A DNA stretch of 64,000 nucleotides, from positions 171,594-235,593 of the IMG/VR virus record IMGVR_UViG_3300026518_000006. One strand, written 5' to 3'. The first letter of the stretch is position 1; every line of letters starts with the position of its first letter. A program made the position numbers and the translations under genes. The notes under the pieces are model-generated. The model saw only the letters and a program-made list of their open reading frames with translations. It was not told the origin of the DNA and made no database searches. Shown one piece after another: positions 10,141 through 63,984 of the stretch.

Positions 10141-11593
10141 TCATATTAAAAACTCCGCATTTTCATTTTTAAAATTTTCCAACCTCTCTTTAAGTATCTC
10201 CAACATTTTATTTTCATAACTCCACTGTTTTTTTGCTTGGTTTAACCTTTCTTCATCAGAAGTATATCTCATTATGCTATCATAATATTCCAATGCACTA
10301 TATGTCTGATTTATAGAATTTTCTATATCAGCTAAAGTCTTGTTAAAATCTGCTTTAGTGAGTGGTCTTGTACTCATTTTAATCCCTTTATTATACCCAA
10401 TATTCAGGAAACTTTTTTATGTGTGCTTTTATTTCCCTTTTTATTTGTTCGGGAACTTTGGCGTTTTTGTTTGCTGTTATAATATTATGGTAATATTTAA
10501 ACAAATCCACTTTATTAGTGTATAAATTTTCCATATCAGTATTAAAAGTCATATAAAATATCTTTTCAGAGCGTCTATTTAAATCCCTAAAGCCATATCT
10601 ATATGAATATGGTTTAGGGTAAGTACTAATATTCTCAATATCTTCGACTATATATATTCTATATCCAACTTTAGTTTGAGAACTTCGTATAGCATATATT
10701 TTTTGCCCAAGCTCCAATTTTTCATCGGCTTTTATCATAACAAATCCTTATACAAATAATTCAGGAAATATCTCTTGATATCTCATACAACTCTCTTCTA
10801 AAAATTTTAGGTTCGATGGATTTTCTGTGAGTGTAAATCCAAAAACCTTGTATGCAATATACTCTTCCAAAACATCTAAAAATAAACTTTGGGATATAGT
10901 TAATTTTTTAGAGTGTGACAGCATACCTTCACTTATGTATTGCTCTACCTGCTTTTTAACTTCAGGGTCATAACAAAACTCATCTCCAAGAGGGTCATTC
11001 ATTTCGTTTTGATAATCCATTTATTCGAGTCCAAGATAAGATAGTCTTTCCTCTGCATCAATGAGCTTAATGTAATCTTCTTGAGATAACTTATAGTCAT
11101 TCAAAGTGGAAATTAACTTTCTCTTTTCCTCTTCAGATTTACCAACAACATTTATTTCGTCTAATTTCCTACAAAAATAATTGTAATCTTTTGACAACTT
11201 TGAAGTAATATTTTTAAGCTTGTTATATTCGGCTATAACCGCTCTCCCTGTCATTGGGTTATCTTCTATTTTTAAAAACAGTCTAATGTTAATATCTCCT
11301 GTTCTATCGAAATCATTACTATAATCTATATAGTATTTTCCTAAGAAGTACTCTCTACTTTCTTGAGAGATATCATCAAAATCATACCAATTGTAATACA
11401 TTTCACCATCAGCTTCATCATATCCTTCATCAACAATATTTCTAATATCTCTATAATCACCGTGGTTATTTGAAAACCCAAAATCAGTGAGAATATTAAA
11501 AAAATGCCCCTTATGACCATAGTGTAGGTCTGCCAAAAACTCAATAACTGCTTTAAAATCCTCTTGCTTGGTTAAATCATATGTTCCTACCAT
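10141..11593 (-). CDS. Run of four small hypothetical genes (10141-10377, 10391-10738, 10748-11020, 11021-11593); the first three end in the PEYFI-type tag
   Basis: Closely packed ORFs with RBSs; C-termini NAEFLI, FPEYWV, FPELFV. Confidence 0.7.
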
Positions 11594-11605
11594 AATACAT
11601 CTCCT

Positions 11606-11824
11606 TTATTCATCTATATAATCTGCATCGTGTCCGTGTCTTCGCATATCCCGCACTACTTTTCTGTGAAAGTTTGGGTCTGTTGAAGTACAACCAAAAT
11701 TGATTGTGTTTCCATTTTCATCACGCCACAAATCACCGTGTTTAGCGTGCCTTACCTTTTTATACCCGTGTTTAGTGGATAGTGCCTCTAATTTTTTGAT
11801 GGCTGTTGAGAGTTTCAAATGCAA
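11606..11824 (-). CDS. HicA-like small basic protein
   Basis: 72 aa; GY..VR..KH..W......TI pattern resembling the HicA dsRBD-like fold; no adjacent HicB seen. Confidence 0.4.
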   Translation of the reverse strand: MHLKLSTAIKKLEALSTKHGYKKVRHAKHGDLWRDENGNTINFGCTSTDPNFHRKVVRDMRRHGHDADYIDE

Positions 11825-12630
11825 CCCTTTTGTGGTAATATAATAGTATAGTGTAAAATTATTTAAAATAAACTTAAATTATAGAGGGGATGTTGGGATT
11901 GGGAAAAGCCGATTGGCTTAACCCAAGATAATTTCTTGTTTTGGTACTTCAATACCTGAGATTTGTTGTAGATAGCCCTGAAGAAGGTCGTTATTTTCAG
12001 CTTCAACAGAACATAAAATATGTTCGTTTTTCAGCTCTAATTCAGGCACATTTTGACCGATATGTGCTTCCAAGAATGGAGTTAAAAGGAATGGATTTCC
12101 ATTACCACCTTGGATGCTGTACGGTTTTTTAATAACAATGCCACTATTGGTCTGCTCTGTGTCGCCTATTAAGATTACATTGTTTGTTAAAACAGTGATT
12201 TTATTCATTATCTTATAGCTTTTTCTTCTTTTTCTTCTTTTTCTTCTTCATACTCAGGAGTAACTTCAGTAAATGTGCCTGTTCTTGACAACAGAAAATT
12301 AACAAGATACTGTACAGCATAAGTTAAATCCCGTATTTCAAGTTTTTTTGCTCCAATTTTATCATTGATTTCAATGGCTTGAGTAAAAGCATTTTTACTT
12401 TCTTCGTCAAGTGAATTAAATAAATATTGTTTATTATCAATATTTACAATTTTTTGTTCTGCTTCTTGCTCAGTTTGTGGATTTGGTAGTGTCATAACTT
12501 TCCTTTTATTTTATTTTATTTTATTTTATACCATTATCTTTAATATAAACTTAAATCATATTTTAAAACATAATAGTTTAAGTTATAATTAAATCCTTTA
12601 AGGTAAAATAGCAGATAAAAAAGGATGTAA

Positions 12631-13437
12631 GTGATAGAGAAAAGTGAAAAACAATATCTCGATATTATGAGAGATATTCTTGATAATGGTGAGATAAAAG
12701 ACACTAGAAACGGCAGAACCAAATCTATATTTGGCGCACAAATTCGTGTCACAGAGTTAAAAGAGGGTAGATTCCCCCTTATGACTTCACGAAAAAACTT
12801 CTATAAAGGCATTGCGGGTGAGTGGAGTGCTTTCCTAAATCAACCAAAAACAATCGAAGACTTCAGAAGCAGAGGGTGTAATTATTGGGATTTATGGGGT
12901 AATGAAGATGGGTCTATAAACATTGATTATGGCAACGCTTGGTCGGCTTTTGATGGTGATGAAAACTATAATCAAATTGAGTATGTGTTAAATCTGTTGA
13001 AAAATGACCCGAATTCAAGACGAATTATTTTTACAGGTTGGAACCCAAAGAACATTATAGATGATACTTTAAATTTACCTTGCTGTCATCATACATATCA
13101 ATTTGTAGTTTCTGAGGGAAAATACCTAAATTTAAAATGGATTCAAAGAAGTGTTGATTGGGCGTTAGGCAACAATTTAACCTTAGCTTCACTGATGTTA
13201 TTGAGTTTTGCACGGGCTTCAGGTTATGAAGTTGGGGAAATTCTAATGGATTATACAGATGTACACATTTACGAAGAACATTGGGAAAATGCTCGAAAAC
13301 AAATTGAAGCCGAAACATTTAGATTTCCAACTTTCGCCGATACTATATCTAACGATATTTATGCTTTTAATAAAGATATGATAAATCTTCAAAACTATCA
13401 ATATAGTGATAGTATCAAATATACACTAAAGGCTTAA
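12631..13437 (+). CDS. thyA: Thymidylate synthase
   Basis: RNGRTKSIFG, FPLMT, DPNSRRI, catalytic LPCCH, QRSVD and HIYEEH motifs. Confidence 0.93.
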   Translation: MIEKSEKQYLDIMRDILDNGEIKDTRNGRTKSIFGAQIRVTELKEGRFPLMTSRKNFYKGIAGEWSAFLNQPKTIEDFRSRGCNYWDLWGNEDGSINIDYGNAWSAFDGDENYNQIEYVLNLLKNDPNSRRIIFTGWNPKNIIDDTLNLPCCHHTYQFVVSEGKYLNLKWIQRSVDWALGNNLTLASLMLLSFARASGYEVGEILMDYTDVHIYEEHWENARKQIEAETFRFPTFADTISNDIYAFNKDMINLQNYQYSDSIKYTLKA

Positions 13438-16065: not shown

Positions 16066-16709
16066 CTTGAAGAGGTGAGAAAAGGTTATATCCCGCACTC
16101 AGGGTAACGCTCATATATACTTAGTAGTTTTTCATTTAGGGTATCGACACTTTTTTGTAGGCTTTCGTTTTCTTTCTGTAGAGATTCTATTATGTCTTGA
16201 GAATATTCCACCTCTCCATTTAAATCTTTAATTTCATTGATAGCCACATCTATCTGAAGTTCAAATTCTTTAATTTCTTCATTTGTTTTTTCGATAATAG
16301 AACAAAGTGGACATTCCATACCGTATCCGATAATGGGGTTATGTCTATTGGCAAAATCACCAACACACACCCACAAAAATTCTTCATCTTCCACGATAGA
16401 ATGTAGGTACTCCTCTATCTCTTTGATGTTTGAAGTCAAGTTATATTTGGCTACCATTTAATTTATTTCCATCACAATGTTTTGAGGTTCGCTATAGAAT
16501 ACTGCTTTGAATACCTTGATGTTCTTTTTTATTGTGGGGTAGTTCAGCATATATTTAAATACCTCATCTTTAGTAAACAACATTGCTTCTTTAAGGTTTT
16601 CTGTGGTGTCAAAACCACCTGTCGAATCATCAATTGTTTTAAAGAATTTCCCTTCATACTCAATATAAAATAGAATATCTTTGATGTCTGTTTTTCTCAT
16701 AATAACTCC

Positions 16710-17690: not shown

Positions 17691-18299
17691 TTAAATAAAA
17701 TACTGAGGAAAGTGTTCTTTACCGAACTCAATATATTTTTGTTTAATGTCTTTGTCTAACTCTACATTAGGGTAATAATATTTGTTTTCAAATGAAGTTA
17801 TTTGGTTATTATAACAATAGAATTTGCCCTCAATATCAGGACAGTATTTAAATGAAGTTATTTGATTATCACTACAATTAATATCACCTTTAATATCAGG
17901 ACAGTATTTAAATGAGGTTATCTCGTTATAACTACAATAAAAATAACCACCAATATCAGGACAATACTTGAATGAGGTTATTTTGTTTCCCCTACAATTA
18001 AAATCCCCCTTAATATCAGGACAATACTCAAAGGAAGTTATTTGATTTCCACTACAATAAAAATCACCCTTAATATCAGGACAAAACTTAAATGAGGTTA
18101 TCTCGTTATAGACACAACTAAAGTCACCCTTAACATCAGGACAGTATTCAAATGAAGTTATTTTGTTATAACTACAATCAAAATTACCCTCAACTCTTTT
18201 ATAACAACCCTCTAATGAAGTCAATCCTTTTTCAGAGACATCAAGGTCTCCATAATAGACTTCATTTGATTTGTCTCCGTAGAGGTCTTTGAATGTCAT
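17691..18299 (-). CDS. Leucine-rich-repeat-like protein, paralog 1 (7 x 20-aa repeats)
   Basis: LTSLEGC followed by 60-bp repeats encoding NxITSFxYCPDIKGDFxC; ends FPQYFI. Confidence 0.85.
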   Translation of the reverse strand: MTFKDLYGDKSNEVYYGDLDVSEKGLTSLEGCYKRVEGNFDCSYNKITSFEYCPDVKGDFSCVYNEITSFKFCPDIKGDFYCSGNQITSFEYCPDIKGDFNCRGNKITSFKYCPDIGGYFYCSYNEITSFKYCPDIKGDINCSDNQITSFKYCPDIEGKFYCYNNQITSFENKYYYPNVELDKDIKQKYIEFGKEHFPQYFI

Positions 18300-22021: not shown

Positions 22022-23277
22022 ATAATTTCCTTTTTATATAATTTGTATAGCAGTATAATAAAAAATGTTTAAATTGGTCTTAAACAATTTATATAAATCT
22101 CTCAGGATTGTCTTTCGAGTTCCAAATATCTCTAAGGTGCCAAAATTCAAGTGCGCTTATATAAGGAGTGCCTGCACTTGTTTTCCCGTACATTATAAGC
22201 TCTGAAGTTTCTTTTAAGTCTTTAAATGGAACATCGAAATATACATCAGTTATTATACCCTCATCATAAATTAAAAACGGCATTTTCGGAACAAAAGCTT
22301 TAGGAATATACTCATCTGTTTCTACCCTAATACCACTCTGCCCTTCAATATTACCGTAGCTTTTATCTATAGCTATATATTTTTCTTCATCCAAAAGGTC
22401 GTTTAATGTCAAAAGCTGAGCCTTATACACTATTCCCTTTTCTTTTACTAATTTCATTAAAGTATTATAGGTGGTTATATCTTGTAAGACAGAACTACCG
22501 TCTAATAAATTAGTAATTGTCTCTAACATCCCACTAAATCCAAATCATCTTCTATTTTAGTCACATCGTTTCTACCATCAATAGTCCATATAGTATGTTC
22601 TTGTATTTTTAACAACAACTCTTTTAGTTCACTAATTTCATTGGCTTTGTTAATTTTGTTTTCCATTCAAAATCCTTTTGTTTTTTTTTTTTTAATTATA
22701 GTGCAAATAACTTTAAAAGTATATTATATGATGTATTCAGGATATTTTTCTTCAATTACCCTATTTGTAATGCCTCTTTGATTTAATTCTAAGTTGATTA
22801 CAGTCTTTTCTATGTCCCCAATTAATTTACTGTTTCTTCTTTTTAACAACTCTTCTATGGTCATATCACCAATTTTAGTTTCCTCGTTTGTAGTGGTATT
22901 AGTGACTGAAGCCTTAATCACACCTTCTGAAAGTTTATTTAAATCTAAGCCTAAATGGTCTCTATTAACGTTATGGTTCATATAAAATACTCCATATATT
23001 TTTCTTTTATTTCTTTTTCATTTAAACCCAATCTTTCTTTTAAGATGTTTAGTGTAGCTGTGTGTTTGATTGTTTTTGGTTTTGCTGTAGCAAAAGCTTT
23101 CAATATTTCGTGCACATCTTCACTATTAAAGCGATTAAATAACGCTCGTAATCTTTTATCATATTTATTGTTATATCCCAAAATTTTTTTCATAAGCCAT
23201 AATAACATAAAAATTATTATAAATAGATAAAGATTTTATAAATCTATAAATAAAATAAAACTCCTAAAGGAATATTA

Positions 23278-25744: not shown

Positions 25745-26364
25745 GTGCCAAACTCACATCTCAAGAGCTCAAAGATAAAGCAAATAAAAACAATCCTGAT
25801 GTGCAAATCATAGGTAAATATATAAATTCCAAAACAAACATCTATGTTATTTGTAAATGTGGCAATACGACATCTGTTAGACCCAGTGAATTATATAAAT
25901 CTTGGCGATGTTTTGAGTGTGGTATAAAAGCAAGAAAATACATAAATGGAAATGGAGGATGGTCAACTAAAAGAAATAAAGAAGCTAAAAACAGAATAAT
26001 TCAAAAACACAAAGAATTATTATCCAAAAAATTGCCACATATTGAGTTGGTAGGAGATTATGAGGACAGTAAAACAAAGACAAATTATATCTGTTTTAAG
26101 GTTGGATTAACTCTTTATAAGTATAATGATGTTACGAAATGTATAAAAAATCGCTTTAGAAAAGAGAATAATAATATACTTCTGTTAGGATATATTATAT
26201 TCAAAAATGGAGCGGAAGGTTATGAGTTGGAGCAAAGAATCTTAAATTCTCATCAAAAATATAACTCGGATATTTTGCAATTTGGTGGTAATTCCGAACT
26301 GTTATCTGAGAATATTATTGCTCTCGATAAATACAAATTCATAAAAACAAAGGAAATTATATGA
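25741..26364 (+). mobile_element. Homing-endonuclease-like gene (zinc-ribbon repeats plus GIY-YIG/T5orf172-like C-terminus), apparently internally truncated
   Basis: YINSKT....CKCG...CFECG repeat; a second repeat runs straight into FKVGLT...RF...ELEQ...GNSEL and lacks the YLY segment seen in 34201-34911. Confidence 0.6.
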
Positions 26365-27660: not shown

Positions 27661-28046
27661 TTATGGTGGGTTATATTTTAGAGTTTATATTTGAGTTATT
27701 GATTGGAATAATTACTATTGTAACAGCGTTGGTTATTATTATATTTGGGTTTGTATTTTTGTCTGTGGCAAATCTATTTGATAAATTATCTGATAAATTA
27801 TCTGATAAATTCTTTAGTAAAATAGAAACAAAAAAGGATAAAAATTGAGTTGTGAAACTGAACACAAAAACATAGATATAAATGATTTAGAAACAATGTT
27901 ACAAGAAGCCCGTAAAGGCAGAGCCAAAATAGACAAACAATATGTAGATTTTGATGAAAAAGGTCATTTGTTTGAATACAATATAGACTTTAATCAGTTT
28001 TTAGATGATATTAATTATATATTTAAAAAACACAAAGAGCGAAGTA

Positions 28047-30082: not shown

Positions 30083-30087
30083 TCACC

Positions 30088-30140
30088 AACCTCTTTTAAA
30101 GATTTTACTTTTTTAAAAAGTAAAATATTTCAAAGAGGTT
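30088..30140. repeat. Extended palindrome copy after the S74 gene
   Basis: AACCTCTTT...AGATTTTACTTTT-TTA-AAAAGTAAAATAT...AAAGAGGTT. Confidence 0.85.
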
Positions 30141-39727: not shown

Positions 39728-39728
39728 A

Positions 39729-41581: not shown

Positions 41582-41589
41582 GAATAAAA

Positions 41590-42643: not shown

Positions 42644-43339
42644 ATGAGTTTAGAAACAAAAGAATTATTAAAATACTCTTATAAAAATAAGTTGGCACAT
42701 ATACCGAGTGCGCTTTCAATGGCTCCCTATATCAATGCTGTATTTAATACAAGAGTAACAAAAGATGATATTATAGTTATAGGTAAACCATTTGGGTCAC
42801 AGGCATATTATCTGACTTGGAAGAAGTTGGGTTGGATAGATGACATTGAATCATTAAGTGTAGGTGTAAAACACGATGAAATTGATTTTGTGGACTACTC
42901 TGAAGAAACTATTGGTAACGCATTGGGTGTAGCCATAGGATTGGCATTAGCTAACCCGAATAAATTGGTCTATGTAAACCTCAGCGATGGTGCTCTACAG
43001 ATGGGAAATACCCTTGAAGCCATTCAATTTATAGGACATAATAATATAAAAAATATTTTTGTAACCGTTGATATGAACAATTATCAGGTTACGGGTAAAA
43101 CTACTGATATAATTGATGTTGCACCTGTGATGAAGTTGTGTGAAGAATATTCTTGGCAAGTTGGTGGGGTTACAGGGTTTTATAAAGATATTTTAGAAAC
43201 TTATTTTAAATCAATGACATTTATAGGCAAACCTAAAATTGTCTTTATATCAACAATAAAAGGCTATGAGGTTCCATCTATGACTAAAGACCCTGTTAAG
43301 TGGCACTATAAGAAATTAGAGCCTGAAGATATGGTTTAG
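42644..43339 (+). CDS. Transketolase-like N-terminal (TPP-binding) subunit
   Basis: AHIPSALS, IGNALGVAIGLA, SDG..QMG..LEA...DMNN.Q, TIKG...WHY. Confidence 0.85.
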   Translation: MSLETKELLKYSYKNKLAHIPSALSMAPYINAVFNTRVTKDDIIVIGKPFGSQAYYLTWKKLGWIDDIESLSVGVKHDEIDFVDYSEETIGNALGVAIGLALANPNKLVYVNLSDGALQMGNTLEAIQFIGHNNIKNIFVTVDMNNYQVTGKTTDIIDVAPVMKLCEEYSWQVGGVTGFYKDILETYFKSMTFIGKPKIVFISTIKGYEVPSMTKDPVKWHYKKLEPEDMV

Positions 43340-43348: not shown

Positions 43349-43612
43349 GTGAAGATAGAGCCAAATGATTTAGTGCAATACAAAATAGAAGACCACAGTG
43401 ACAGCAGTCTAAAATATGGTGTTATTGAACATATATCGTAGCGCAAAGATACAAATAATGATATGCTATCAGGCACAATTGCTTTATGGAAAATAAAAAA
43501 TAAAGGCTGTATTAAACAAATGTATCTACTTTCACATTTTAAAGTTATTGAAAATTTTGGTAAAATAACCCCCGCTGAATTCAAAAAACAATACCCTGAG
43601 AGGTTTATATGA
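43349..43612 (+). pseudogene. Small PEYFI-tag gene with an in-frame TAG at 43439-43441 (absent from the ORF track)
   Basis: AGGAG SD and GTG start; reads MKIEPNDLV...EHIS*RKDT...KKQYPERFI. Confidence 0.6.
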
Positions 43613-44410
43613 GATTATACAAGAACAAAAAACTAATGGTTGCCGTAGATGACAATCTGCAAAGTTGGACGAAAATAACCGACAACCCAAACAGCATATT
43701 CAACAATAGTGATAAATACACTCCAAAAGGATATGTGATAAAGATAAAAAAAGACTTTTGTATTTGCAGAGTAGGTTTTGAAACAACTCCTGTTATGGAA
43801 TTATACTATGTTGGTGTTTTTTACAATGAAGATGATTTAAAGAAACTTATACCTGAGAATTTTGTTTAATTATGAGAATATATATTAATAACCAAAAAGA
43901 AACTCCCTTAATGGTGGGCTTGACAGACGACCTTAGACATCATTCAACTGTATCAACTAAAACCAAAGATTTATTTATCACTTTAAAAAAGGTGTATTTA
44001 AAAGATGTTTCAGAAAAATATTGTTATTATACCTCTAAGTATTCTTACAGTGAGATGGGAGGTACTATAAAATTCAAGTACATAGGTCAGGTTGAAAAAG
44101 AGGAAGATGTAATGAGTCTTATAGCGGAGTATTTTATATGACTAAAGAACTCGTGGTTGGCGAATATTGTGTATATGACTATGAGGGTGTTGTGATATTA
44201 ACCAAAATAGAAAAGAATAAAGAATATTTTGGTGGAATTCAAGCTGTGGATATATTTAAAGTTAATAAAGGAGCTGAAAATCCACACATAGACATAATGA
44301 CATCTCCTTGGGAAATTGCGAAGGTCATCACATCAAATGGAATAGATGTACTGGGCGTTTTTAAGAATAAAGAGGAAATGTTGAAAGAATTTGGAGAATA
44401 TTTTATATAA
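43609..44410 (+). CDS. Three small hypothetical genes (43609-43869, 43872-44141, 44138-44410) with PEYFI-type C-termini
   Basis: Ends IPENFV, IAEYFI, FGEYFI; located between the two transketolase halves. Confidence 0.75.
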
Positions 44411-46093: not shown

Positions 46094-46642
46094 CTATATG
46101 AAATACTGAGGAAAGTGTTCGTTACCGAACTCAATATATTTTTGTTTAATGTCTTTGTCTAACTCTACATTAGGATAGTAATACTCGTTTTCAAATGAAG
46201 TTATTTGGTTATTATAACAATAGAATTTGCCCTTAACATCAGGACAGTATTTAAATGAAGTTATCTGATTATAACTACAATTAATATCACCTTTAATATC
46301 AGGACAAAACTCGAATGAAGTTATTTGATTTCCACTACAATTAATATCACCCTTAATATCAGGACAAAACTCGAATGAAGTTATCTGATTTCCACTACAA
46401 TCAAAATTGTCCTTAATATCAGGACAATACTCAAATGAGGTTATCTCGTTATAGGCACAATTAAAGTCACCCTTAATATCAGGACAGTACTTAAATGAGG
46501 TTATTTTGTTATAACTACAATCAAAATTACCCTCAACTCTTTTATAACAACCCTCTAATGAAGTTAATCCTTTATCAGAGATATTAAGGTCTCCATTATA
46601 GACTTCATTTGATTTGTCTCCATAGAGGTCTTTGAATGTCAT
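46094..46642 (-). CDS. Leucine-rich-repeat-like protein, paralog 2 (6 x 20-aa repeats)
   Basis: Near-identical N- and C-termini to 17691-18299, with one fewer repeat. Confidence 0.85.
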   Translation of the reverse strand: MTFKDLYGDKSNEVYNGDLNISDKGLTSLEGCYKRVEGNFDCSYNKITSFKYCPDIKGDFNCAYNEITSFEYCPDIKDNFDCSGNQITSFEFCPDIKGDINCSGNQITSFEFCPDIKGDINCSYNQITSFKYCPDVKGKFYCYNNQITSFENEYYYPNVELDKDIKQKYIEFGNEHFPQYFI

Positions 46643-53936: not shown

Positions 53937-56900
53937 TTCAATTCCTTAATTTTTATTAATCTATTTATAAGCGGGAATAGACTATAATTGTTTATAAAAT
54001 ATTTAAAAGAGGTTTATAAATGGTGTATGATAAAATATATAATGACTATATAGGTGTTGATTTCGTAAAGAAAATTATTGGTGAAGAGGTAGATATTGAG
54101 CTACTTACTCCAAAACAATTGAAAGCCATTTATAAAACGACAATAAAGATATTGCAAAACTATGATAAAACAAAAGAATACCTTGAACCTGAAGCTACAA
54201 AATTTGAAGTTGAAGCCCTCAATAGATTTATAGAGGAAAATTGGAGTGAAGCACTTATTTAAAAGGATAACAATATGTGGTTGGAAGAAATAAGAAAAAT
54301 ACCGCTTAAATCAACAGATAAAACTTTCGTTATATATGACATAAAAACAGGATATGCAGTTCCTATTTTAGAAGAGGTTAAAGATATAAAAACTCAATAT
54401 AAAGAGATTTTAAAATTCTTGAAATTTCCTGTTGTGTCTCCTGATGCTGATTCTGAGAATATAACGAAACTAAAAGAAGACGCAAAAGAAATAAAAGAGT
54501 TGATAGAGCGGTATTATGCTGAACATTTAATATAAGGATGACAAGATGAATACAGGAAAATCTTTTTGTGTAGTGTGTGAACGATTGGTTAATAGTGTCG
54601 AAACTGAATGTACAAGATGTAAAAATCCTACTGTTTATATTGGACAAATACCACGATTTCCGAAACACCCCAAAAAATCGGATTATGAATTTATGGCTAA
54701 TGCTGTGATGAGAGCTTTAAAATACAACAGAAAACGCTATAATAAAACAAATGATGGCTTTTTAGATAAAATTAACAACTTTTTATCGAAATATTCTTCT
54801 ATTTATGACAAAAAAGTAATTGACTCTATAATAAATCCTGAAGAGAAGGAGCCACAGGTGTCTCTTTGTGATTTCGACTCAACACACTTTGACAAAGAAA
54901 GTCCTGATGTGTTCTACATTTTTAAATTTCTTGATAGGTATGCTGTTAAGGAGATAAATATAAACAAAACCTATTACACTTCTAATATTTCTATTATAAC
55001 AAAGCTTATTGATGCAACAACACTAACTGGATTATTCACGATTAAAGAGAGTGAATTACAAAATATCGAATGGTTTAAAACCACAAAGACGAACTATCTA
55101 TCTAAAACAAAACGAATGAGTAACACTGTTGTTTTGGGTTCATTTATGAACAGAGAAGGTGATGATGTATTGAATGTCTATTTTGAAGATAAATTGTTGT
55201 CTAAAATTTTGGCTTCTGAAATGAAATTATTTGTGTTAAAATACCAAAACTTTTTTAACACAGAAATAGTTAGGCAAGCTTTGGAGGCTCCTGATTATCA
55301 TACGATAAGTAGACACTTCCCCGAAATAATGGTATAAAGGATTTTTTATGGAACTCATACACATTTTTGGTATATTAACAACAACATTTTTGAACTATAA
55401 TGGATTTTTTAAAACAGTAATAATTTTAGTGTTGTTGTTTATGGCTCTTTGGGCTAATGATGAAGAAGTTGGTGGCGAAATAGTGGGGTATATTGGCATA
55501 TGGGCGGGGGTAGGTGCTATATTATATTCTCAAATTAGTATTGAAGAAGCGGTTATGGGTTTCTTACAATATTTTATTTTGGGGTTTGTTTGGAGTGTAT
55601 TTATGTATTCAAGGGTTGTAAAACACTTAGTTATAAAAGACAAATTAAGCAAATATGAAAAAGTAAAATCGCTTGATTACTACACTAAACAGATTACAGT
55701 GGATAGAATTATAGTTTGGATATTGATGTTTCCATTGTCGATTTTAAATTTTCTGTTTGAAAGAAGTTTGAGCGGTCTTGTAGCCACATTAAAAAAGACT
55801 AAAAATATATACAAATATTGGGCAAAACATTACTACGAAAAAATAGGAAAATCGAAACCAAATTATAAAGATTAAGCTCTTACTAATATTTTCAATGCTA
55901 TAATTTAACATAAAGACAGAAAGGATTGAAAAATGGAAAATCGAGAATACAACAAAAAATATAGCCGTGCATTGATTGCCATCACCAATATCAAAACCGC
56001 TATGATGAATGCCAAGATAGATATTAATTTTTTGGGTAGAAAAGACATCGATGGAAGTATGTACTCCAAAACAAAACTTCAAGAAGATTTTGAAAAAATT
56101 GAGCAGGCTTTTGAAAAAGAGTACAAATATCTTCTTGAACTAACAAAAGAACTTCAAAACAACACAAAATGCACTAAGGATTGAAAATGAAAATTGAAAC
56201 AGAGCTTAAAGACCTTTACAAAAACAACATAAAAAATAGCGTTTTAATCGCTATGTATATAGTGATGGTTGTGGGCTCCTTTTTTGGAGATGTAGAAATA
56301 CCAAAAACAAATGCAGGTGTTATCTACATAACCACGATGTTTATAGCATTTATGTTGTCAGGTATGTATATAGCGGGAGTTATTGTAGATTTTATTAAAG
56401 TGAGAGAATGGAATAAAGATGTTGCTGATGCCATTAATGGGAAAGAAAATCTTTTAAAACAAGTGTTTGATTTTCATAAAAATATTAAGGCAACTAAAAA
56501 GAAGTACTCTGATTATTTTACCAACAAAAAGGACGATTAATGCCTATTAAACAAGGTGATATTTATTATATGGATATAGGCGATAAGTCTTTTATTGGTG
56601 TAGTAGAAGAGGTTGATTTAGAGGGTGATGGTGCTTCATCGGTATATGTACTTTATTCCTTGAGCACAAATGAAGAGCGATATTTTCCATATATAATCGA
56701 TAACAAAAATCTAAAAGAAAAAATATCAAATATAAAAGTAAAAAGAGTAAAAAATAGAGTGGAGTATTACAAGCCTATACTTATTAACTTATTTCCTGAA
56801 AGGTATGTGTGATGAAAGTTAACAAACCGAATAAGGTGTTGGAATTAGGTTTAGACACACTAGAAAAAGTCACTGGGTATATAGTATTTGTGGAAGATTA

Positions 56901-57424
56901 CAAAAAAAATTTTGATAGAATTGACATTCTCAACAAATACATCGATAATAAAGAGCTCTCTATTGAAGATATTAGGTGGGCTACTAATGAAATAAGAGCT
57001 ATTCTACAAAATGAATGTGTTTGTGAACAGGCAGGAGAACCCAAATACAATATGATGTACCATAAACAAAACTACAAATCTCTTTTGGAAAAGATTTGTG
57101 AAAAATACCCTCAATTTATGGTGTAAAAAATGAAACATATTCCTTTAATTGTTTGGTGTAATGATATTTACGATTTGGAAGAAGTCGAGGGGTATCTTGG
57201 AGTTTATTTTTGTGAAGATGGTTTTCATAAAGATATCCACTATCCCTGTATTTATTATTATGACGAAAGGGAAGAATATTACGATTTACTTGAAACTTCT
57301 ACTATTTCTATAAAAGAATTAAAAGAAATTTTTTACAGAAAACAAAAGGAAAATTCACTTATACCGATGAAGCCATCTGATATTATAAAAGATTTTCCTG
57401 AATATTTAGTCTAAAGGAAACAGT

Positions 57425-57758
57425 GTGAGTACTCGATATATTAAAGTTGTGAGAAAAAAGGCTACCCTGAGTTCAGATTTGTCGCAAGAAAACCAAAAGG
57501 TGTTGTATATCTGTCTTACTCGACAAACCAAAAAAGAATTGAACAAAAAATTTACGAAAAAATTTACTCCGATATGTATGAGAAAGAAGAAGAGCTCTCG
57601 AAGAAATATGAGCCAAAAGAGCAGGAAATCGAGAAAAAATATACGCTCTCCATAGGGAGTTGGATAAACTTAGAGATGAATACAACAATGAATTAGAAGA
57701 CATAATGAATAAAATCGTGTCGGAATTCAAAGAAAATAACCCACAATATTTTATTTAG
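57425..57758 (+). pseudogene. PEYFI-tag gene broken by two -1 indels in GAGAAAAAA runs
   Basis: Adding one A at about 57454 and at about 57634 gives MSTRYIKVVRKKGYPEFRF...EKKIYALHRELDK...ENNPQYFI. Confidence 0.6.
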
Positions 57759-60655: not shown

Positions 60656-61993
60656 GTGAAAACAATAAAAGATATACTTGATGAACTGAACCTTGAAAAT
60701 GGTTCAAACTACAAAATGGAAGTACTGAAGAAACACAAAGACAGCAAACTTCTTCAAAGAGTGCTCAAAATGACCTATGATAAAGTCACATACACTTATG
60801 GTATTACAATGAAAAATATCACTTACACTCCTGAAAGTATGCGTGATATAAATGTGAACCTTGAAGACGCTCTTGATGTTCTTGATGAATTTTTTGTTAG
60901 TCGTGAATGGACAGGAAATAAAGCAATTCAAGCCCTTACAAATCTTTTAAGTAAACTTTCCAAAGACGATGCCGAAGTGCTTGAAAAGGTAATCAATCGT
61001 GACCTTAGAATCAATATGGGTAGAAGTAATATTAACAAAGTGTTTAAAAACCTTATTGTGAAGCCACCTTATATGAGATGTGGTTTGTACTCTGATAAAA
61101 CAGCCAAAAAAATTGACTTCACTAATGGTGCATATATTCAATTGAAAGCTGATGGTATGTTCCAAGCTGTAACAGTTGAAAATGGTAATGTAACATTTAC
61201 AGCAAGAAGTGGTGAAGAAAGAGAATTACCACATCTTGAGCAATATTTTAAAACTTTCAAAGACGGTGTTTACATTGGAGAACTTCTTGTACACGGTGTT
61301 GATAACCGTTCCATAAGCAACGGTATTATTAACTCAGATGATGAAGAAGCAAAAAAAGAAGTTTATATTCAACTTTGGGATTACATTACACTTGATGAGT
61401 ACAGTCGTCCAAAAGATAAAAAGAATAAAACTTTTTATGTAGACCGCTTTAAACAACTACTTGAAAATATTAAAGAGGTTCCTGATACTTTTATTAATAT
61501 TGTTCCAACTGCTGAAGTTTTCAATATTTCAGATGCTCTTCAAAAAGTACAAGAATGGATGGCACAAGGTTTCGAAGGTGGTATTCTTAAAGACAAAAAC
61601 AACATCTTTATTGACCACACTTCACCAACACAACTTAAACTAAAACTTGAACTTGATGCTGATGTTCGTATTACTGGATTTATCGAGGGCAAAAAAGGTA
61701 CCAAAAGAGAGCAGACATTTGGTGCGATGACATTTGAGACTGATGATGGAAAAATTAAAGGGTCTTGTTCAGGGTTTACAGATGCACAACTTGAAGATTT
61801 TAATTCAAGACGCAACGAGTTGATAGGCAAGGTTATTACAGTTGAGTTTAATGACATTACAAAGGGCAGAGATAATGAGTACTATGCTTTAAGCCACCCA
61901 CGATTTATTGAAATTAGAAATGATAAAAATGAGACAGATACACTTGAAAGAGTTCAAGAAATGAAAAATATGGCACTAGGTTTGAAGTCTTAA
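60656..61993 (+). CDS. gp30: ATP-dependent DNA ligase (T4 gp30-like)
   Basis: QLKADG adenylation motif, IGEL, EGGILK, LKLK, CSGFTD, HPRF.EIR.DK. Confidence 0.95.
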   Translation: MKTIKDILDELNLENGSNYKMEVLKKHKDSKLLQRVLKMTYDKVTYTYGITMKNITYTPESMRDINVNLEDALDVLDEFFVSREWTGNKAIQALTNLLSKLSKDDAEVLEKVINRDLRINMGRSNINKVFKNLIVKPPYMRCGLYSDKTAKKIDFTNGAYIQLKADGMFQAVTVENGNVTFTARSGEERELPHLEQYFKTFKDGVYIGELLVHGVDNRSISNGIINSDDEEAKKEVYIQLWDYITLDEYSRPKDKKNKTFYVDRFKQLLENIKEVPDTFINIVPTAEVFNISDALQKVQEWMAQGFEGGILKDKNNIFIDHTSPTQLKLKLELDADVRITGFIEGKKGTKREQTFGAMTFETDDGKIKGSCSGFTDAQLEDFNSRRNELIGKVITVEFNDITKGRDNEYYALSHPRFIEIRNDKNETDTLERVQEMKNMALGLKS

Positions 61994-62294
61994 ACCTATA
62001 TTTCAAAGGATGATTATGATAACTTTAGTAATGGAAGAAACGGAAGGTTTACAAAAGCCTATAGAGTTAAAAATTAATGATAGAGTATTCAAATACCACT
62101 ATAATAATGAAACTCCTGATGAGAGTTTTTTAAACTACTTGAAAGCTATATCAATTACAAAATAAAAGTGGAATTTAAGAGTAAAAGTGGTACTATAACT
62201 AAAGTTGGTGTTATTAGAGATGTTAAACCTACAAAACAAGGGGTTTTTGGTATTGTATTGGACGATATGTTATTGCTTGCATAAGGGGTAAATT

Positions 62295-63984
62295 TTGGTA
62301 TATTCACAAAGAGCAACTGTAAAAGATTATACTACTATTGTTAAAGATGCTGAATATGATAAGTATTATAAAGACCCGAAAGATGTCTTAATCTTAACAA
62401 AAGAAACAATAAAAAATAAGTATTTTTTAACAAAAATTGATGGTAAACTATTTGGATTCAAAGATGAGTTTGAATATGAATTATATTCAGAGGGTGTTTC
62501 AAATATCGAGTTTATTCCGCCTGATTTAATGGGCAGAAGAGTACAAGTGTTTGAAACTACAAAAGATAAAATTAGGTTAAAGAGTAAACACTACAGATTT
62601 GAATATGCCTATATAGGCTTATGGGTGGTAGAGCGTCTTTTAAAACCTGAAAAAGACCCTGAATATTTTATATAGGATTGATATGAAAAAGTTCACTAAA
62701 GATAAGTTTGTTATTGTTTTTAAATCAGATGATTACGATAATACCCTAATACTACACAATTCATATTTTGATGATATTGCAGATGATTTCATTCCTATTG
62801 AACCATCCGATAAGAACTCAAAACTATCACCATTTGCAAGTTCTCCAATAGGATATTTTAATAGTATAGAAGAGGCTAAGGCATATATTTACTCTAAGAG
62901 GTTTATGAAGTTGGAGAATTATATAAAAAGGATTATTAATAACGATGAACATCAAGGTTTATCTCCAAGATATATTAAGGCGGTAGTAGAATCTTATATA
63001 GGAGAAAGAAATAAACTCAAAGAAGTTATTAAGAAACACCAAAAAAATTTCCTGAGTACTATATATGAAAATGCTTAAAAATAACGATGTATATATCTAT
63101 CTACCAAAATTGTTAAGTAAAGAGTTTGTTGAGTTTCTTTATCGTGTAGATAAAGAAAAAGAAAAAACTGTAGTTTTATCTATACTTGCATATGGCAAGG
63201 GAAGATACCAATTTTTTGGGAATTGGACGGAAACAAATAAAGAAGATTTTTTTGAGCATTATATGAAATATGATAAAGCTGTTGAACTATACCCTGAATA
63301 TTTTGTGTGAATTAGATGTGTAAAGTAAAAAATACTAAAGAAGTTGATGTTTTTGAATTGATTAGAAATGGTGACTACAAAACACCTATCGGTAAATTTA
63401 TCTATATTATTGATGCAAACAGCCCCATAATAACAAAACATATGATTGTTGATGTTAAGCTTCCTAATGTAAAATACCACCAATACGGGGTTATTCATTA
63501 CGACTCAGGAAATGGCGCAATCCATTCTTATATAATGGGAAGAATAAATGGGTCTATAAAAAATAGGTTTCACTCTAATATAATAAAAGTAGTCAAGGCA
63601 CTTATGAATAGACACAACTTAACTAAAACACAAATCACAGATGAGTACACAAAAGCTGTACTTAAAAGTGTTGCTGAAGAAATTCCCGAATATTTTGTAT
63701 AGGATATGTTTATGGAGATATATAAAAATGACTTATTTGTATTAAAAGGTAGAAGAGGAGCCTTTTTATTGTATATTGTTGATATTAAAACCGAAAACTA
63801 TGCAAATAAAAGCAAAGTGATGTGTGAATATTATGAAATAGATTCAAATACTTACACTAAAGAGTCGAAGCCTCTATATTTAATATCACAAAGATTAAAA
63901 CATTTTATGTTTTTAGAAAATATTGAGGTTCCTGATACAGAAATTATGAATTTGAGAGATAGATATTTAGAGTATTTTATTTAA
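62295..63984 (+). CDS. Run of five small hypothetical genes; four end in PEYFI-type tags
   Basis: Ends DPEYFI (62675), YPEYFV (63310), IPEYFV (63702), YLEYFI (63984). Confidence 0.75.

What the first reader, a model, noticed from the sequence alone, without database searches (positions are those of the whole stretch)
10141..63984. About 24 unrelated small proteins share a C-terminal [FY]-P-E-[YF]-[FL]-[IV]-COOH tag
Seen, C-termini by ORF start or low coordinate: NAEFLI 10141, FPEYWV 10391, FPELFV 10748, YPECGI 16086, FPQYFI 17691, NPERFI 22089, YPEYII 22724, YMEYFI 22978, YPERFI 43349, IPENFV 43609, IAEYFI 43872, FGEYFI 44138, FPQYFI 46094, WSEALI 54020, YAEHLI 54275, FPEIMV 54546, FPERYV 56540, YPQFMV 56809, FPEYLV 57130, NPQYFI 57425, DPEYFI 62295, YPEYFV 63065, IPEYFV 63316, YLEYFI 63706. 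Each has E/Q four residues from the end, a terminal I/V and usually a charged helix before it. The bodies are unrelated except for the two LRR paralogs. Codons vary synonymously (CCT/CCC/CCA, GAA/GAG, ATA/ATT/GTA/GTG/GTC, all three stops), pointing to protein-level selection. The tag is absent from core replication, structural and rSAM genes. Inference: a shared sorting or docking signal for a family of accessory effectors, such as capsid loading for co-injection, binding to a common hub or PDZ protease, or a timed degron.
Basis: partly seen in the sequence, partly recalled or inferred. Interest (0 to 1): 0.88.

Follow-up and report, generated by a model that had tools for sequence, protein, structure and literature searches.

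The report
Shared C-terminal tag on phage proteins
About a fifth of the genes in this large T4-like phage, and up to three quarters of the small genes in some other phages, end in the same short peptide (aromatic-Pro-Glu-hydrophobic-hydrophobic-Ile/Val), a protein-level address label that nobody seems to have described and that travels with one particular phage protease/ATPase module.

Summary
22 intact ORFs and 2 broken ones in the window end in [FYWHN]-[P/A/G]-[E/Q]-x-[FLMWY]-[I/V]-COOH. P[EQ]xx[IV] closes 16 of 114 termini against 0.05 expected (P~1e-35). Conservation follows codon positions 1 and 2, synonymous codons vary freely, and the protein bodies are unrelated.

The tag is a ~14-residue module: an amphipathic helix followed by PE-hydrophobic-hydrophobic-[I/V].

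It is widespread:
- The cultured Vibrio phage phiKT1024 has it on 69 of ~329 ORFs.
- N4/AD45-like podovirus contigs have it on up to 13 of 17 ORFs.
- KVP40 and CP220 regions have none.

Tagged genes never sit behind T4-type late promoters (0/91 vs 39/352). They encode acidic, soluble proteins.

Two new leads:
- Every tag-bearing locus lies in one clade of a phage HExxH-zincin + VWA(MIDAS) protein (DUF2201; window 5027-6586) that pairs with a MoxR ATPase: 19/32 loci inside the clade, 0/45 outside. Tagged genes interleave with these genes.
- The tag is also the near-universal C-terminus of a large family of Gad2-like nucleotidyltransferases.

Best reading: a shared docking handle read through its free C-terminus, probably by the zincin-VWA/MoxR machine. 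The receptor is inferred, not shown. I found no description of the tag in the searchable literature.

The parts
10141..10377 (-). tagged ORF, 78 aa, ends NAEFLI (weak: A at -5)
   Evidence: GCG-GAG forms a GGAG Shine-Dalgarno for the overlapping downstream start
10391..10738 (-). tagged ORF, 115 aa, ends FPEYWV
10748..11020 (-). tagged ORF, 90 aa, ends FPELFV
16086..16457 (-). tagged ORF, 123 aa, ends YPECGI (weak last three residues)
17691..18299 (-). tagged LRR protein, 202 aa, ends FPQYFI
   Evidence: Pfam LRR_4. Only the 4 closest of 120 LRR homologs carry the tag. AF2 model pLDDT 96: helix 183-196, then a short turn
22089..22529 (-). tagged ORF, 146 aa, ends NPERFI
22724..22981 (-). tagged ORF, 85 aa, ends YPEYII
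22978..23208 (-). tagged ORF, 76 aa, ends YMEYFI
43463..43612 (+). tagged C-terminal piece (49 aa, ends YPERFI) of an 87-codon frame that starts at 43349 and is broken by an in-frame TAG at 43439-43441
43609..43869 (+). tagged ORF, 86 aa, ends IPENFV; weak paralog of the next two
43872..44141 (+). tagged ORF, 89 aa, ends IAEYFI
   Evidence: the AF2 model is poor (pLDDT 43)
44138..44410 (+). tagged ORF, 90 aa, ends FGEYFI; an ORFan in a database of 5.8 billion proteins
46094..46642 (-). tagged LRR paralog, 182 aa, ends FPQYFI
54020..54262 (+). tagged ORF, 80 aa, ends WSEALI (weak)
54275..54535 (+). tagged ORF, 86 aa, ends YAEHLI (weak)
54546..55337 (+). tagged ORF, 263 aa, ends FPEIMV; no Pfam match
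56540..56812 (+). tagged ORF, 90 aa, ends FPERYV
56809..57126 (+). tagged ORF, 105 aa, ends YPQFMV
57130..57414 (+). tagged ORF, 94 aa, ends FPEYLV
57660..57758 (+). short tagged ORF (32 aa from a TTG start, ends NPQYFI); not continuous with the 57425 ORF, so probably a remnant or a frameshifted gene
62295..62675 (+). tagged ORF, 126 aa, ends DPEYFI
63065..63310 (+). tagged ORF, 81 aa, ends YPEYFV
63316..63702 (+). tagged ORF, 128 aa, ends IPEYFV
63706..63984 (+). tagged ORF, 92 aa, ends YLEYFI
42644..43339 (+). possible extra member: transketolase-N-like protein, 231 aa, ends EPEDMV (has P-E-x-M-V but no aromatic at -6)
5027..6586 (-). candidate reader of the tag: 519-aa protein with an N-terminal HExxH zincin domain (DUF2201_N), an acidic low-complexity linker and a C-terminal VWA-like domain with an intact MIDAS motif (DxSGS...GGT...D)
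   Evidence: Pfam; alignments. Tags are confined to its clade in the family tree. Its relatives are interleaved with tagged genes and MoxR

Best explanation
The tag is a portable C-terminal peptide module of about 14 residues. It consists of an amphipathic helix (hydrophobic at -13 and -10), an aromatic-Pro kink (-6, -5), Glu or Gln (-4), three hydrophobic residues and the free carboxylate. It serves as a common docking handle.

The tag is the standard C-terminus of a large family of phage Gad2-like nucleotidyltransferases. In phages that carry one clade of a zincin-VWA protein (DUF2201; window 5027-6586) and its MoxR AAA+ partner, it has been placed on dozens of unrelated, fast-turning-over, acidic, soluble proteins of the early/middle gene arrays.

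My proposed mechanism is inferred, not shown. The VWA domain of the zincin-VWA protein captures the tail, with its MIDAS metal site binding the terminal carboxylate and a neighbouring groove holding the hydrophobic knob. One machine (VWA receptor + HExxH peptidase + MoxR remodeller) then handles all tagged proteins. It either trims or destroys them on a timetable (a phage-encoded degron system), or uses them as interchangeable adaptors that bring host targets to the peptidase.

What is shown:
- protein-level selection;
- modularity;
- dependence on the free C-terminus;
- non-late gene class;
- restriction to certain lineages;
- co-distribution and gene linkage with the zincin-VWA/MoxR module.

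For: Protein-level, end-anchored signal:
- Enrichment of 1e-35 at termini, with no enrichment inside proteins.
- 3-periodic information content and free synonymous variation.
- In 14 phiKT1024/Va1 ortholog pairs, P(-5), E(-4), -1 and -10 are each 93% conserved while most other C-terminal positions are about 65-85%.

Modular:
- Bodies are unrelated.
- The tag sits on an LRR, an L7/L12-CTD-like domain, a nucleotidyltransferase and many ORFans.
- Only the 4 nearest of 120 LRR homologs carry it.

Lineage-specific, so a lineage-specific reader is likely:
- phiKT1024 has 69/329 ORFs tagged.
- KVP40, from the same host genus, has 0/78, and CP220 has 0/35.
- Whole lineages shift together: all tags end in V in L005 and L213, and all have Q instead of E in L121, L122 and L128.

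Link to zincin-VWA/MoxR:
- Among 50,697 cultured phage records, full-length relatives of window 5027-6586 occur only in the phiKT1024 group and the Alteromonas AD45 group.
- In a maximum-likelihood tree of 77 family members, all 19 loci with a tag within +-10 kb fall in one clade (support 99/96) and none of 45 outside it do (Fisher P=7e-10).
- That clade spans T4-like and N4/AD45-like backbones.
- Tag-rich contigs found only through the tag DNA pattern turned out to carry the gene: L002=L174, L016=L176, and also L053 and L088.
- Tagged genes directly flank or interleave with the zincin-VWA and MoxR genes in at least 10 loci.
- A conserved tagged nucleotidyltransferase-like gene follows MoxR in phiKT1024, L125, L174 and L176.
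- HExxH and the MIDAS motif are intact in all members.

Gene class and protein properties:
- Tagged genes are not late: TATAAATA lies upstream of 0/91 tagged and 39/352 untagged genes.
- Tagged proteins are soluble and acidic: median pI 5.5, 3% TM-like.
Against: - No binding, cleavage or structure of a complex was obtained.
- The co-distribution is confounded by shared ancestry and a shared aquatic gene pool.
- Some clade members show no tag within +-10 kb (13 of 32). AD45-P4 has the full module but only 3 weak tags in about 70 kb examined.
- Gad2-like tagged proteins also occur on contigs where no zincin-VWA gene lies nearby (L213, L214).
- In the window the MoxR gene is not adjacent and was not found in the 64 kb.
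- Whole lineages use Gln instead of Glu, which argues against the Glu side chain being a metal ligand. The terminal carboxylate still could be.
- The AF2 model of the tagged LRR protein places the tail with pLDDT 72-90. That looks like an ordered element packed on the body rather than a floppy linear motif.
- GntR/FCD regulators of Firmicutes and Spirochaetes, which have no link to these phages, end in the same YPEYFI with the same upstream pattern.
Confidence: 0.45

Rival explanations
1. Intramolecular structural cap. The helix, Pro kink and one hydrophobic turn fold back on the protein's own body. The module is a transferable stabilising C-terminal element for small, newly evolved proteins, and there is no common partner.
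For: - AF2 places the tail of the LRR protein with pLDDT 90 falling to 72, as helix 183-196 plus a short helical turn.
- P-E/Q followed by hydrophobic residues is a typical helix start, and E/Q interchange fits capping rather than charge recognition.
- An unrelated cellular family (GntR/FCD) ends in the same sequence, and a solved homolog, 7U5Q, ends in PDYF.
Against: - It is hard to see why unrelated folds would need an identical cap with invariant P and E and an exact distance to the C-terminus.
- It is hard to see why 23% of one phage's proteins have it while a related phage of the same host genus has none.
- It does not explain why whole lineages switch I to V or E to Q together.
- It does not explain why it tracks one clade of an unrelated gene.
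- Only one confident model exists; the second was uninformative.
Confidence: 0.2
2. Classical degron or docking tail read by a conserved host machine (an AAA+ protease such as ClpXP, Lon, FtsH or HslUV, or another host hub). The phage zincin-VWA/MoxR module is only a fellow traveller.
For: - Hydrophobic C-terminal tails are known degradation signals in bacteria, and adaptor tails such as the SspB C-terminus dock on ClpX (my knowledge of the field, not tested here).
- The tag occurs in phages of different backbones and probably different hosts, with GC 0.20-0.45.
- It also occurs on cellular GntR regulators.
- phiKT1024 and AD45-P4 also encode ClpP.
Against: - KVP40 infects the same host genus and also has clpP, yet shows no tag in 78 ORFs.
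- A scan of 185,579 bacterial and archaeal genomes for the YPEYFI-stop pattern found no family of host proteins with the tag. It found only the GntR family, an LRR protein and mis-binned phage contigs.
- Lineage-wide shifts of the motif suggest a reader that evolves with the phage.
Confidence: 0.15
3. The tail is the recognition or modification site of the Gad2-like nucleotidyltransferase. The enzyme carries a copy itself (self-association or auto-modification). The small proteins are its substrates or partners, for example through nucleotidylylation of the Tyr at -6 or -3.
For: - 129 of the top 150 representatives of this family (3,875 clusters at E<=0.001) end in the tag with the same extended logo, and 118 keep the GG[S]...D[IVL]D motif.
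- The gene sits beside MoxR and tagged genes.
- Members hit Pfam Gad2 in precomputed annotation.
- Gad2 is an anti-Gabija protein predicted to be a nucleotidyltransferase (bioRxiv 10.1101/2023.05.01.538930).
Against: - Tyr is not invariant at -6 (Y/F/H/N) or at -3 (Y/L/F/E).
- No member of this family lies in the 64-kb window.
- A Lactococcus phage homolog of the nucleotidyltransferase core lacks the tag.
Confidence: 0.08
4. Nascent-peptide or translational effect. The last ~13 residues act inside the ribosome at termination, pausing or promoting re-initiation to support translational coupling in tightly packed gene arrays.
For: - The conserved span (-13 to -1) matches the part of a nascent chain between the peptidyl-transferase centre and the tunnel constriction (my inference).
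- Tagged genes are more often followed within 15 nt or overlapped by the next gene: 45/68, against 52/123 small untagged genes.
- Synonymous sites of the tag are exploited for the next gene's Shine-Dalgarno. CCG-GAG is enriched (CCG 30% vs 9%, GAG 46% vs 21%), and ATA-TGA overlaps create the ATG.
Against: - 16 of 68 tagged genes in phiKT1024, and several in the window, have more than 40 nt or no gene downstream.
- Untagged genes in the same arrays are coupled just as tightly.
- The same tail sits on 280-aa enzymes and on GntR regulators.
- No precedent is known to me.
Confidence: 0.05
5. Capsid-targeting signal that loads the tagged proteins into the head for co-injection (one of the reader's options).
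For: There is precedent in principle: the N-terminal capsid targeting sequence of T4 internal proteins (my knowledge). The proteins are small and soluble.
Against: - No tagged gene is directly behind the late promoter motif that precedes the structural genes (0/91 vs 39/352).
- 69 different cargo species in one phage is implausible.
- The tag also occurs in podoviruses with a different head assembly.
Confidence: 0.03
6. Nucleotide-level element (recombination cassette boundary, ribosome-binding or enhancer sequence), or the phage sliding-clamp-binding motif.
For: The tag DNA is AT-rich and lies just upstream of the next start. Part of it doubles as a Shine-Dalgarno when genes overlap. T4-type phages do have mobile intergenic cassettes and C-terminal clamp-binding tails (my knowledge).
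Against: - Information is confined to codon positions 1 and 2. Leu, Pro, Glu, Ile and Val use all their codons, and nothing is conserved after the stop.
- DNA polymerase, gp32, RNase H, helicase and the gp55-like sigma factor of phiKT1024, and the gp55-like sigma factor and ligase of the window, lack the tag.
Confidence: 0.03

Closest known systems
Capsid targeting sequence (CTS) of phage T4 internal proteins
   Same: A short peptide shared by otherwise unrelated phage accessory proteins that gives them a common fate.
   Different: The CTS is N-terminal, is cleaved by the prohead protease and belongs to proteins made for head assembly. The tag here is at the extreme C-terminus, sits on non-late genes, and marks 20-25% of the proteome.
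C-terminal degrons and adaptor tails of bacterial AAA+ proteases (ssrA tag, non-polar C-termini, SspB C-terminal ClpX-binding tail)
   Same: A short C-terminal sequence read together with the free end. Hydrophobic last residues. It can mark many unrelated proteins.
   Different: The sequence is different, with an invariant Pro-Glu and an aromatic residue before Pro. The tag is genome-encoded on each gene rather than added. It is lineage-restricted, absent from KVP40 on the same host genus.
Class II/III PDZ ligands (E-[YF]-[YF]-[IVA]-COOH type)
   Same: EYFI, EYFV and EYYV ends are, from memory, textbook PDZ-binding C-termini. The free carboxylate and the I/V at the last position fit.
   Different: No PDZ domain was found in the window or in the complete phiKT1024 genome. 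Bacterial PDZ proteins are mostly periplasmic, whereas the tagged proteins lack signal peptides. The conserved Pro and upstream helix are not part of PDZ motifs.
MoxR AAA+ / VWA partner systems (e.g. CbbQ-CbbO, RavA-ViaA, NorQ-NorD)
   Same: The window protein 5027-6586 has a VWA domain with an intact MIDAS motif, and its relatives are encoded next to a MoxR ATPase. In known systems the VWA MIDAS binds an acidic group of the client protein (my knowledge).
   Different: Here the VWA is fused to an HExxH zincin domain, is phage-encoded, and the proposed clients are dozens of proteins sharing a C-terminal peptide. None of this has been tested. I found no functional study of DUF2201 in the searchable literature.
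Gad2 (Gabija anti-defence 2) nucleotidyltransferase family
   Same: The ~280-aa tagged proteins next to MoxR hit Pfam Gad2 in precomputed annotation and keep a GG[S]...DxD motif. Gad2 is a phage anti-defence protein predicted to be a nucleotidyltransferase.
   Different: The characterised Gad2 is 400 aa and comes from Bacillus phages. Nothing is reported about a C-terminal motif. My local Pfam copy gave no Gad2 hit. No member lies in the window. Anti-Gabija activity of these proteins is untested.
Cell-wide C-terminal sorting tags (PTS1 -SKL, LPXTG/sortase, PEP-CTERM/exosortase, T9SS C-terminal domain)
   Same: One C-terminal signal on many unrelated proteins, co-distributed in genomes with a dedicated processing enzyme. 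This is the logic I used to find the zincin-VWA candidate.
   Different: Those are cellular secretion or organelle-import systems. The tag here is in virulent phages, on cytoplasmic-type proteins, with no transmembrane segment after it.

Membership tests
DUF2201-type zincin + VWA protein (candidate reader; window 5027-6586) | N-terminal putative metallopeptidase domain with HExxH | tested here: met
   Pfam DUF2201_N E=4.6e-19. HE..H...H is invariant in 17- and 23-sequence alignments.
DUF2201-type zincin + VWA protein (candidate reader; window 5027-6586) | C-terminal VWA-like domain with MIDAS residues (DxSxS, T, D) | tested here: met
   Pfam DUF2201 E=1.4e-8. D391-S393-G394-S395, T449 and D473 are invariant.
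DUF2201-type zincin + VWA protein (candidate reader; window 5027-6586) | Encoded next to a MoxR-type AAA+ ATPase | tested here: not met
   Met in most related loci. No MoxR homolog was found in the 64-kb window or in L120. The source contig is 235.6 kb, so the gene may lie elsewhere.
DUF2201-type zincin + VWA protein (candidate reader; window 5027-6586) | Binds or cleaves the tag | not testable with these tools
   Only co-distribution and neighbourhood are available.
Class II PDZ ligand | Hydrophobic-x-hydrophobic-COOH with I/V/L at the last position | tested here: met
   Logo of 82 tags: -1 is I/V/L in 82/82 and -3 is Y/L/F in 63/82.
Class II PDZ ligand | A PDZ-domain protein available in the same compartment | tested here: not met
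   No PDZ hit among window proteins or phiKT1024 proteins. The host side was not tested.
T4-type capsid targeting sequence | N-terminal position, cleavage by the prohead protease, late expression | tested here: not met
   The tag is C-terminal. There is no late promoter before tagged genes.
Phage sliding-clamp-binding C-terminal motif | Present on DNA polymerase and on late-transcription factors | tested here: not met
   The phiKT1024 polymerase ends LDDW. The gp55-like sigma factors of phiKT1024 and of the window lack the tag.
Mobile nucleotide cassette / promoter-stem-loop type repeat | Conservation at the DNA level that is independent of reading frame and extends into the intergenic DNA | tested here: not met
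   3-periodic information, none after the stop. All synonymous codons are used.
Gad2-like nucleotidyltransferase (tag-bearing enzyme family in related phages) | Pol-beta-type GS...DxD motif and a match to the Gad2 model | tested here: inconclusive
   Motif present in 118 of 150 representatives. Precomputed Pfam Gad2 hits for P0142 and P0164. My own Pfam scan gave only a weak DUF6036 hit, and there was no PDB match. No member in the window.
ssrA-like / non-polar C-terminal degron | Tag-dependent degradation by a cellular AAA+ protease | not testable with these tools
   Needs stability assays.

The most novel reading that the evidence does not exclude
These phages run their own address-label system. 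A genome-encoded C-terminal peptide (helix, then PE-hydrophobic-hydrophobic-[I/V]-COOH) marks a fifth or more of the proteome. It is read by a phage zincin-VWA/MoxR machine that works like a ubiquitin-free proteasome lid: a receptor, a metalloprotease and an AAA+ ATPase. The rapidly exchanged small tagged proteins (LRR, L12-like and others) act either as timed-destruction clients or as interchangeable adaptors that deliver host proteins, including defence proteins, to the peptidase. In the adaptor case they would be the phage counterpart of F-box or PRANC substrate receptors.
Probability: 0.3. Interest if true: 0.95.

Novelty: new variant of a known kind. Interest (0 to 1): 0.85.

Why it matters
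- Most small early genes of large phages are 'hypothetical' ORFans. A shared tag gives a common handle on hundreds to thousands of them at once. It allows them to be recognised in metagenomes, purified, trapped and tested as a class.
- The tag also offers a first testable role for two widespread but uncharacterised phage gene sets: DUF2201 zincin-VWA with MoxR, and the Gad2-like nucleotidyltransferases.
- If the tag directs proteins to a phage-encoded protease/ATPase, it would be a new principle of phage proteome control or host take-over. It would also be a compact, portable tag-and-reader pair of possible use as a tool.
- Cultured, sequenced phages carry the system (the Vibrio phiKT1024/Va1/pv27 group), so the question can be tested directly.

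Tried and rejected
- **Exact 21-mer DNA scan:** found nothing.
- **Literature:** searches for the hexapeptides, for 'conserved C-terminal motif', for short linear motifs in phage early proteins, for the phiKT1024-group papers, for DUF2201 and for PDB 7U5Q found no description of the tag.
- **Tag-only protein search:** abandoned. E-values are computed for 5.8 billion sequences and max_evalue is capped at 10.
- **One diverged paralog family:** rejected.
- **Sliding-clamp motif, DNA-level element, capsid loading:** rejected or disfavoured.
- **PDZ/TPR reader encoded by the phage:** not found.
- **ClpP as the specific reader:** weakened, because KVP40 has clpP but no tags. A ClpP locus scan returned nothing.
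- **Covariation between E/Q tags and the MIDAS or HExxH residues of the zincin-VWA protein:** none seen.
- **Sigma-70 promoter scan:** uninformative in this AT-rich DNA (109 found vs 101 expected).
- **Second AF2 model (89-aa paralog):** too poor to use (pLDDT 43).
- **Homologs of a small tagged protein:** only itself was found.
- **Names for Gad2-like representatives:** none available.

Full report
**What the window is.** The 64-kb window is part of a 235,593-bp IMG/VR contig (IMGVR_UViG_3300026518_000006), with 31% GC. It encodes:
- a gp44-type clamp loader, a gp55-like late sigma factor, a DnaB-type helicase, an ATP-dependent ligase, thymidylate synthase and endonuclease VII;
- tail-fibre-like proteins, a GroES-like protein and eight radical-SAM proteins.

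The best cultured relatives reach only 38-49% amino-acid identity. They are Campylobacter Eucampyvirinae and, more closely, the unclassified T4-like Vibrio phage group phiKT1024/Va1/pv27. The T4 late-promoter octamer TATAAATA sits 30-40 nt upstream of nine genes, including the tail-fibre gene.

**The observation.**
- The frame starting at 43349 has an in-frame TAG at 43439-43441.
- The NPQYFI end belongs to a 32-aa ORF (57660-57758) in a different frame from 57425.

The enrichment is extreme:
- P[EQ]xx[IV] closes 16 of 114 called genes, but occurs only 8 times at 18,785 internal positions (P=1.5e-35).
- The looser [EQ]x[FLIWMY][IV] closes 23 genes against 0.46 expected.
- Overlapping shadow ORFs do not show it.

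Information content per nucleotide is high at codon positions 1 and 2 of Pro, Glu and the last three residues. It is low at position 3 and absent after the stop. In other phages the same residues use every synonymous codon. Selection therefore acts on the peptide.

With the last ten residues removed, tagged proteins are no more alike than untagged or shuffled ones. Pfam and PHROGs find almost nothing in them except LRR_4 in two proteins.

**Anatomy.** Pooling 82 tags from seven sources shows that the motif is longer than six residues:

| Position | Residues |
|---|---|
| -13 | L/I |
| -10 | L/I/F/V |
| -8 | E/K |
| -6 | Y/F/H |
| -5 | P (73/82) |
| -4 | E (79) or Q (3) |
| -3 | Y/L/F |
| -2 | F/L/M |
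| -1 | I/V |

The i, i+3/4 spacing indicates an amphipathic helix, followed by an aromatic-Pro kink and one hydrophobic turn.

An AF2 model of the tagged LRR protein (pLDDT 96) shows exactly this: helix 183-196, a break at F-P, and a three-residue helical turn. Confidence falls from 90 to 72 at the very end. A second model was too poor to use.

Tagged small proteins are acidic (median pI 5.5) and rarely have a hydrophobic 19-mer (3% against 12%).

**Distribution.**
- A degenerate DNA pattern for the tag pulled out unrelated IMG/VR contigs in which many small ORFs carry it: 14 of 25 in L005, 11 of 24 in L008, and also L016, L002 and L011.
- The same pattern in 185,579 prokaryotic genomes hit mostly chance sites. 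It also hit phage contigs mis-binned into MAGs, with 13 of 17 and 11 of 17 ORFs tagged (L049, L045).
- The complete genome of the cultured Vibrio phage phiKT1024 has 69 strict and about 78 loose tags among ~329 ORFs, all annotated 'hypothetical protein'.
- By contrast, 50 kb of KVP40 (same host genus) has 0 of 78, and 29 kb of Campylobacter phage CP220 has 0 of 35.
- Two backbones are involved. One is T4-like myoviruses: the window, L005, L117 and phiKT1024. The other is N4/AD45-like podoviruses with a family-A polymerase and an N4 gp43-like primase: L008, L016, L002 and the mis-binned 'Ignavibacteria' contigs.
- A few tagged proteins are homologous across the two backbones over their full length, so tagged genes are exchanged.
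- Between phages whose core proteins are 40-50% identical the tagged gene set is almost completely different, yet the tag persists.
- Lineages have their own flavour: all -V in L005 and L213, and all Q in place of E in L121, L122 and L128.
- Of 120 homologs of the window's LRR protein, only the four closest end in the tag. The tag is therefore an add-on, not part of that fold.

**Gene class.** In phiKT1024 the late-promoter octamer lies within 60 nt upstream of 30 of 260 untagged genes (portal, sheath, tube, capsid, terminase, fibres) and of 0 of 69 tagged genes. With the window added the figures are 39/352 against 0/91 (P=1e-4). Tagged genes sit in tightly packed arrays typical of early/middle regions.

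**A nucleotide-level side effect.** When the next gene's ATG overlaps the stop (xTA-TGA), Pro-Glu is preferentially written CCG-GAG. In the window Ala-Glu is written GCG-GAG and Met-Glu ATG-GAG. Each creates a GGAG Shine-Dalgarno 8 nt upstream of the next start. Overall, CCG is 30% in tags against 9% genome-wide, GAG 46% against 21%, and ATA 68% against 20%. This is use of synonymous freedom, not the cause of the tag. Most tags use CCT/CCA-GAA, and many have no gene close downstream.

- The phage polymerase, gp32, RNase H, helicase and sigma factor lack the tag. That rules out the clamp-binding idea.
- No PDZ or TPR domain was found in the window or in phiKT1024.
- Clustering untagged proteins across all tag-rich loci gave one family present in four independent lineages, even in loci of 2-3 kb. 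This is the DUF2201 protein of the window (5027-6586), which has an HExxH zincin domain, an acidic linker and a VWA domain with an intact MIDAS motif.
- Among cultured phages, full-length relatives exist only in the phiKT1024 group and in the Alteromonas AD45 podoviruses. Other phages match only the VWA half.
- Two IMG/VR scans gave 77 distinct family members.
- In their ML tree, all 19 loci with at least one tag within +-10 kb fall in one clade of 32 (support 99/96). None of the 45 loci outside it, holding well over 1,000 ORFs, has a tag (Fisher P=7e-10).
- The clade contains both backbones. It also includes the contigs of L002 and L016, which had been found only through the tag pattern.
- A MoxR AAA+ gene lies next to the zincin-VWA gene almost everywhere.
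- Inside the clade the two genes are flanked by or interleaved with tagged genes in L121, L122, L124, L125, L137, L168, L171, L174, L176 and phiKT1024.

Weak points:
- 13 clade members show no tag nearby.
- AD45-P4 has the module but only three weak tags.
- The window's own MoxR was not found.
- Shared ancestry inflates the statistics.

**A tagged enzyme family.** The gene after MoxR in phiKT1024, L125, L174 and L176 encodes a 277-379-aa protein with a GGS...DIDxxF motif of the Pol-beta nucleotidyltransferase type. It ends in the tag. Further members occur in L178, L122, L129 and AD45-P4, where it is one of the three tags.

A profile search of 1.84 billion representatives found 3,875 relatives at E<=0.001. 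Of the best 150, 129 end in [PA][EQ]x-hydrophobic-[IVLF] with the same upstream logo, and 118 keep the catalytic-type motif. Precomputed annotation assigns two of them to Pfam Gad2. Gad2 is a phage anti-Gabija protein predicted to be a nucleotidyltransferase (bioRxiv 10.1101/2023.05.01.538930).

My own Pfam copy and the PDB gave no significant hit. A Lactococcus phage homolog of the core lacks the tag. The tag is therefore the hallmark end of one subfamily of these enzymes. That subfamily is probably its oldest carrier.

**Interpretation.** The end-anchored, protein-level, modular and lineage-restricted nature of the tag argues for a docking handle read together with the free carboxylate by one partner that co-evolves with the phage. 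The co-distribution and gene linkage make the zincin-VWA/MoxR module the best candidate. VWA MIDAS sites bind carboxylates of client proteins in known MoxR systems (established knowledge), and the fused zincin could trim or destroy what is captured. Whether the small proteins are clients (timed removal of early proteins) or adaptors (variable domain binds a host target, constant tail docks on the peptidase) cannot be decided here.

The main rival is an intramolecular cap. It is supported by the ordered AF2 tail and by the same YPEYFI end, with the same upstream pattern, on GntR/FCD regulators of Firmicutes and Spirochaetes. A solved homolog of these, 7U5Q, ends in PDYF. The cap idea does not explain the genomic distribution.

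**Novelty.** No Pfam or PHROG family captures the tag. The papers on the phiKT1024 group do not mention it. No paper in the searchable library contains the hexapeptides in this context. C-terminal address labels are a known kind of thing. A label carried by a fifth of a virulent phage's proteins, spread over two phage backbones and tied to a zincin-VWA/MoxR module, has to my knowledge not been described.

Noticed in passing
window 43349-43612 (+): An 87-codon frame, the same size as its three tagged neighbours, is interrupted by a single in-frame TAG at 43439-43441. It could be a pseudogene, an assembly error or a read-through site.
   Followed up: partly
window 24611-42579 (+): A long same-strand block holds eight radical-SAM/4Fe-4S proteins, a family-2 glycosyltransferase, an outer-membrane beta-barrel (OmpA-like) protein, an endosialidase-chaperone domain and a split transketolase-like pair. 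The many radical-SAM genes recall Campylobacter phages. Function unknown.
   Followed up: no
window 10141, 22978, 44141 and loci L005, L045, L049: When the next gene's ATG overlaps the stop (ATA-TGA or GTA-TGA), the -5/-4 codons are written xxG-GAG, giving a GGAG Shine-Dalgarno 8 nt upstream. In the window the non-Pro variants at -5 that use this (Ala GCG, Met ATG) occur in these overlap cases.
   Followed up: yes
L027:5707-6381, L064:4981-5655, L065:457-1131, L079:5947-6639: 224-230-aa GntR/FCD transcription regulators of Treponema, Lachnospiraceae, Eubacterium and Corticicoccus end in YPEYFI, with the same hydrophobic -10 position and E/K at -8 in three of the four, as the phage tag. PDB 7U5Q, a homolog, ends in ...RPDYF + 1 residue.
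   Followed up: partly
L121, L122, L128 (closest relatives of the window's zincin-VWA gene): All tags in these loci have Gln instead of Glu (PQYFI). The window has 4 such tags of 24. This is a lineage-wide shift of an otherwise near-invariant residue.
   Followed up: partly
phiKT1024 record 148292-151225, 180639-181772, 30872-31678, 12162-13229, 107923-108282: A second, different C-terminal pattern (acidic residues then Trp: LDDW, DLDDW, NDEW, DDFGW, QEEW) ends the split DNA polymerase, the Dam methylase, RNase H and some unknowns. It may be this phage group's clamp- or SSB-binding tail.
   Followed up: no
L129:11243-12121: One Gad2-like family member has the motif NYPEYFI internally, followed by 13 more residues. 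It is a natural 'blocked C-terminus' variant. P0156, P0190 and P0226 are similar.
   Followed up: no
L036, L045, L049, L070, L088 (MAG 'Ignavibacteria' D1103M12metaG_Bin_482); L071 (MAG 'Thermoplasmata' M9B1D): These GTDB genome contigs are phage DNA (N4/AD45-like polymerase, helicase and primase, and up to 13 of 17 ORFs tagged) that has evidently been binned into cellular MAGs. L036 has the same length as the IMG/VR contig of L011.
   Followed up: partly
phiKT1024 (L022-L025) and AD45-P4 (L019, L119): Both cultured tag-related lineages encode a stand-alone ClpP outside the head module. phiKT1024 also encodes a SohB-type S49 peptidase, a trypsin-like peptidase, GroEL/GroES, a Ro60/TROVE protein, Acb1 and an ADP-ribosyltransferase.
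   Followed up: partly
L214:7411-10390 (-) and L096:3031-3579 (-): DUF285/BspA-type LRR proteins cluster near a Gad2-like gene (L214). One in a Ca. Ruthturnera MAG ends in YPEYFI (L096). LRR bodies therefore recur among tag carriers.
   Followed up: no
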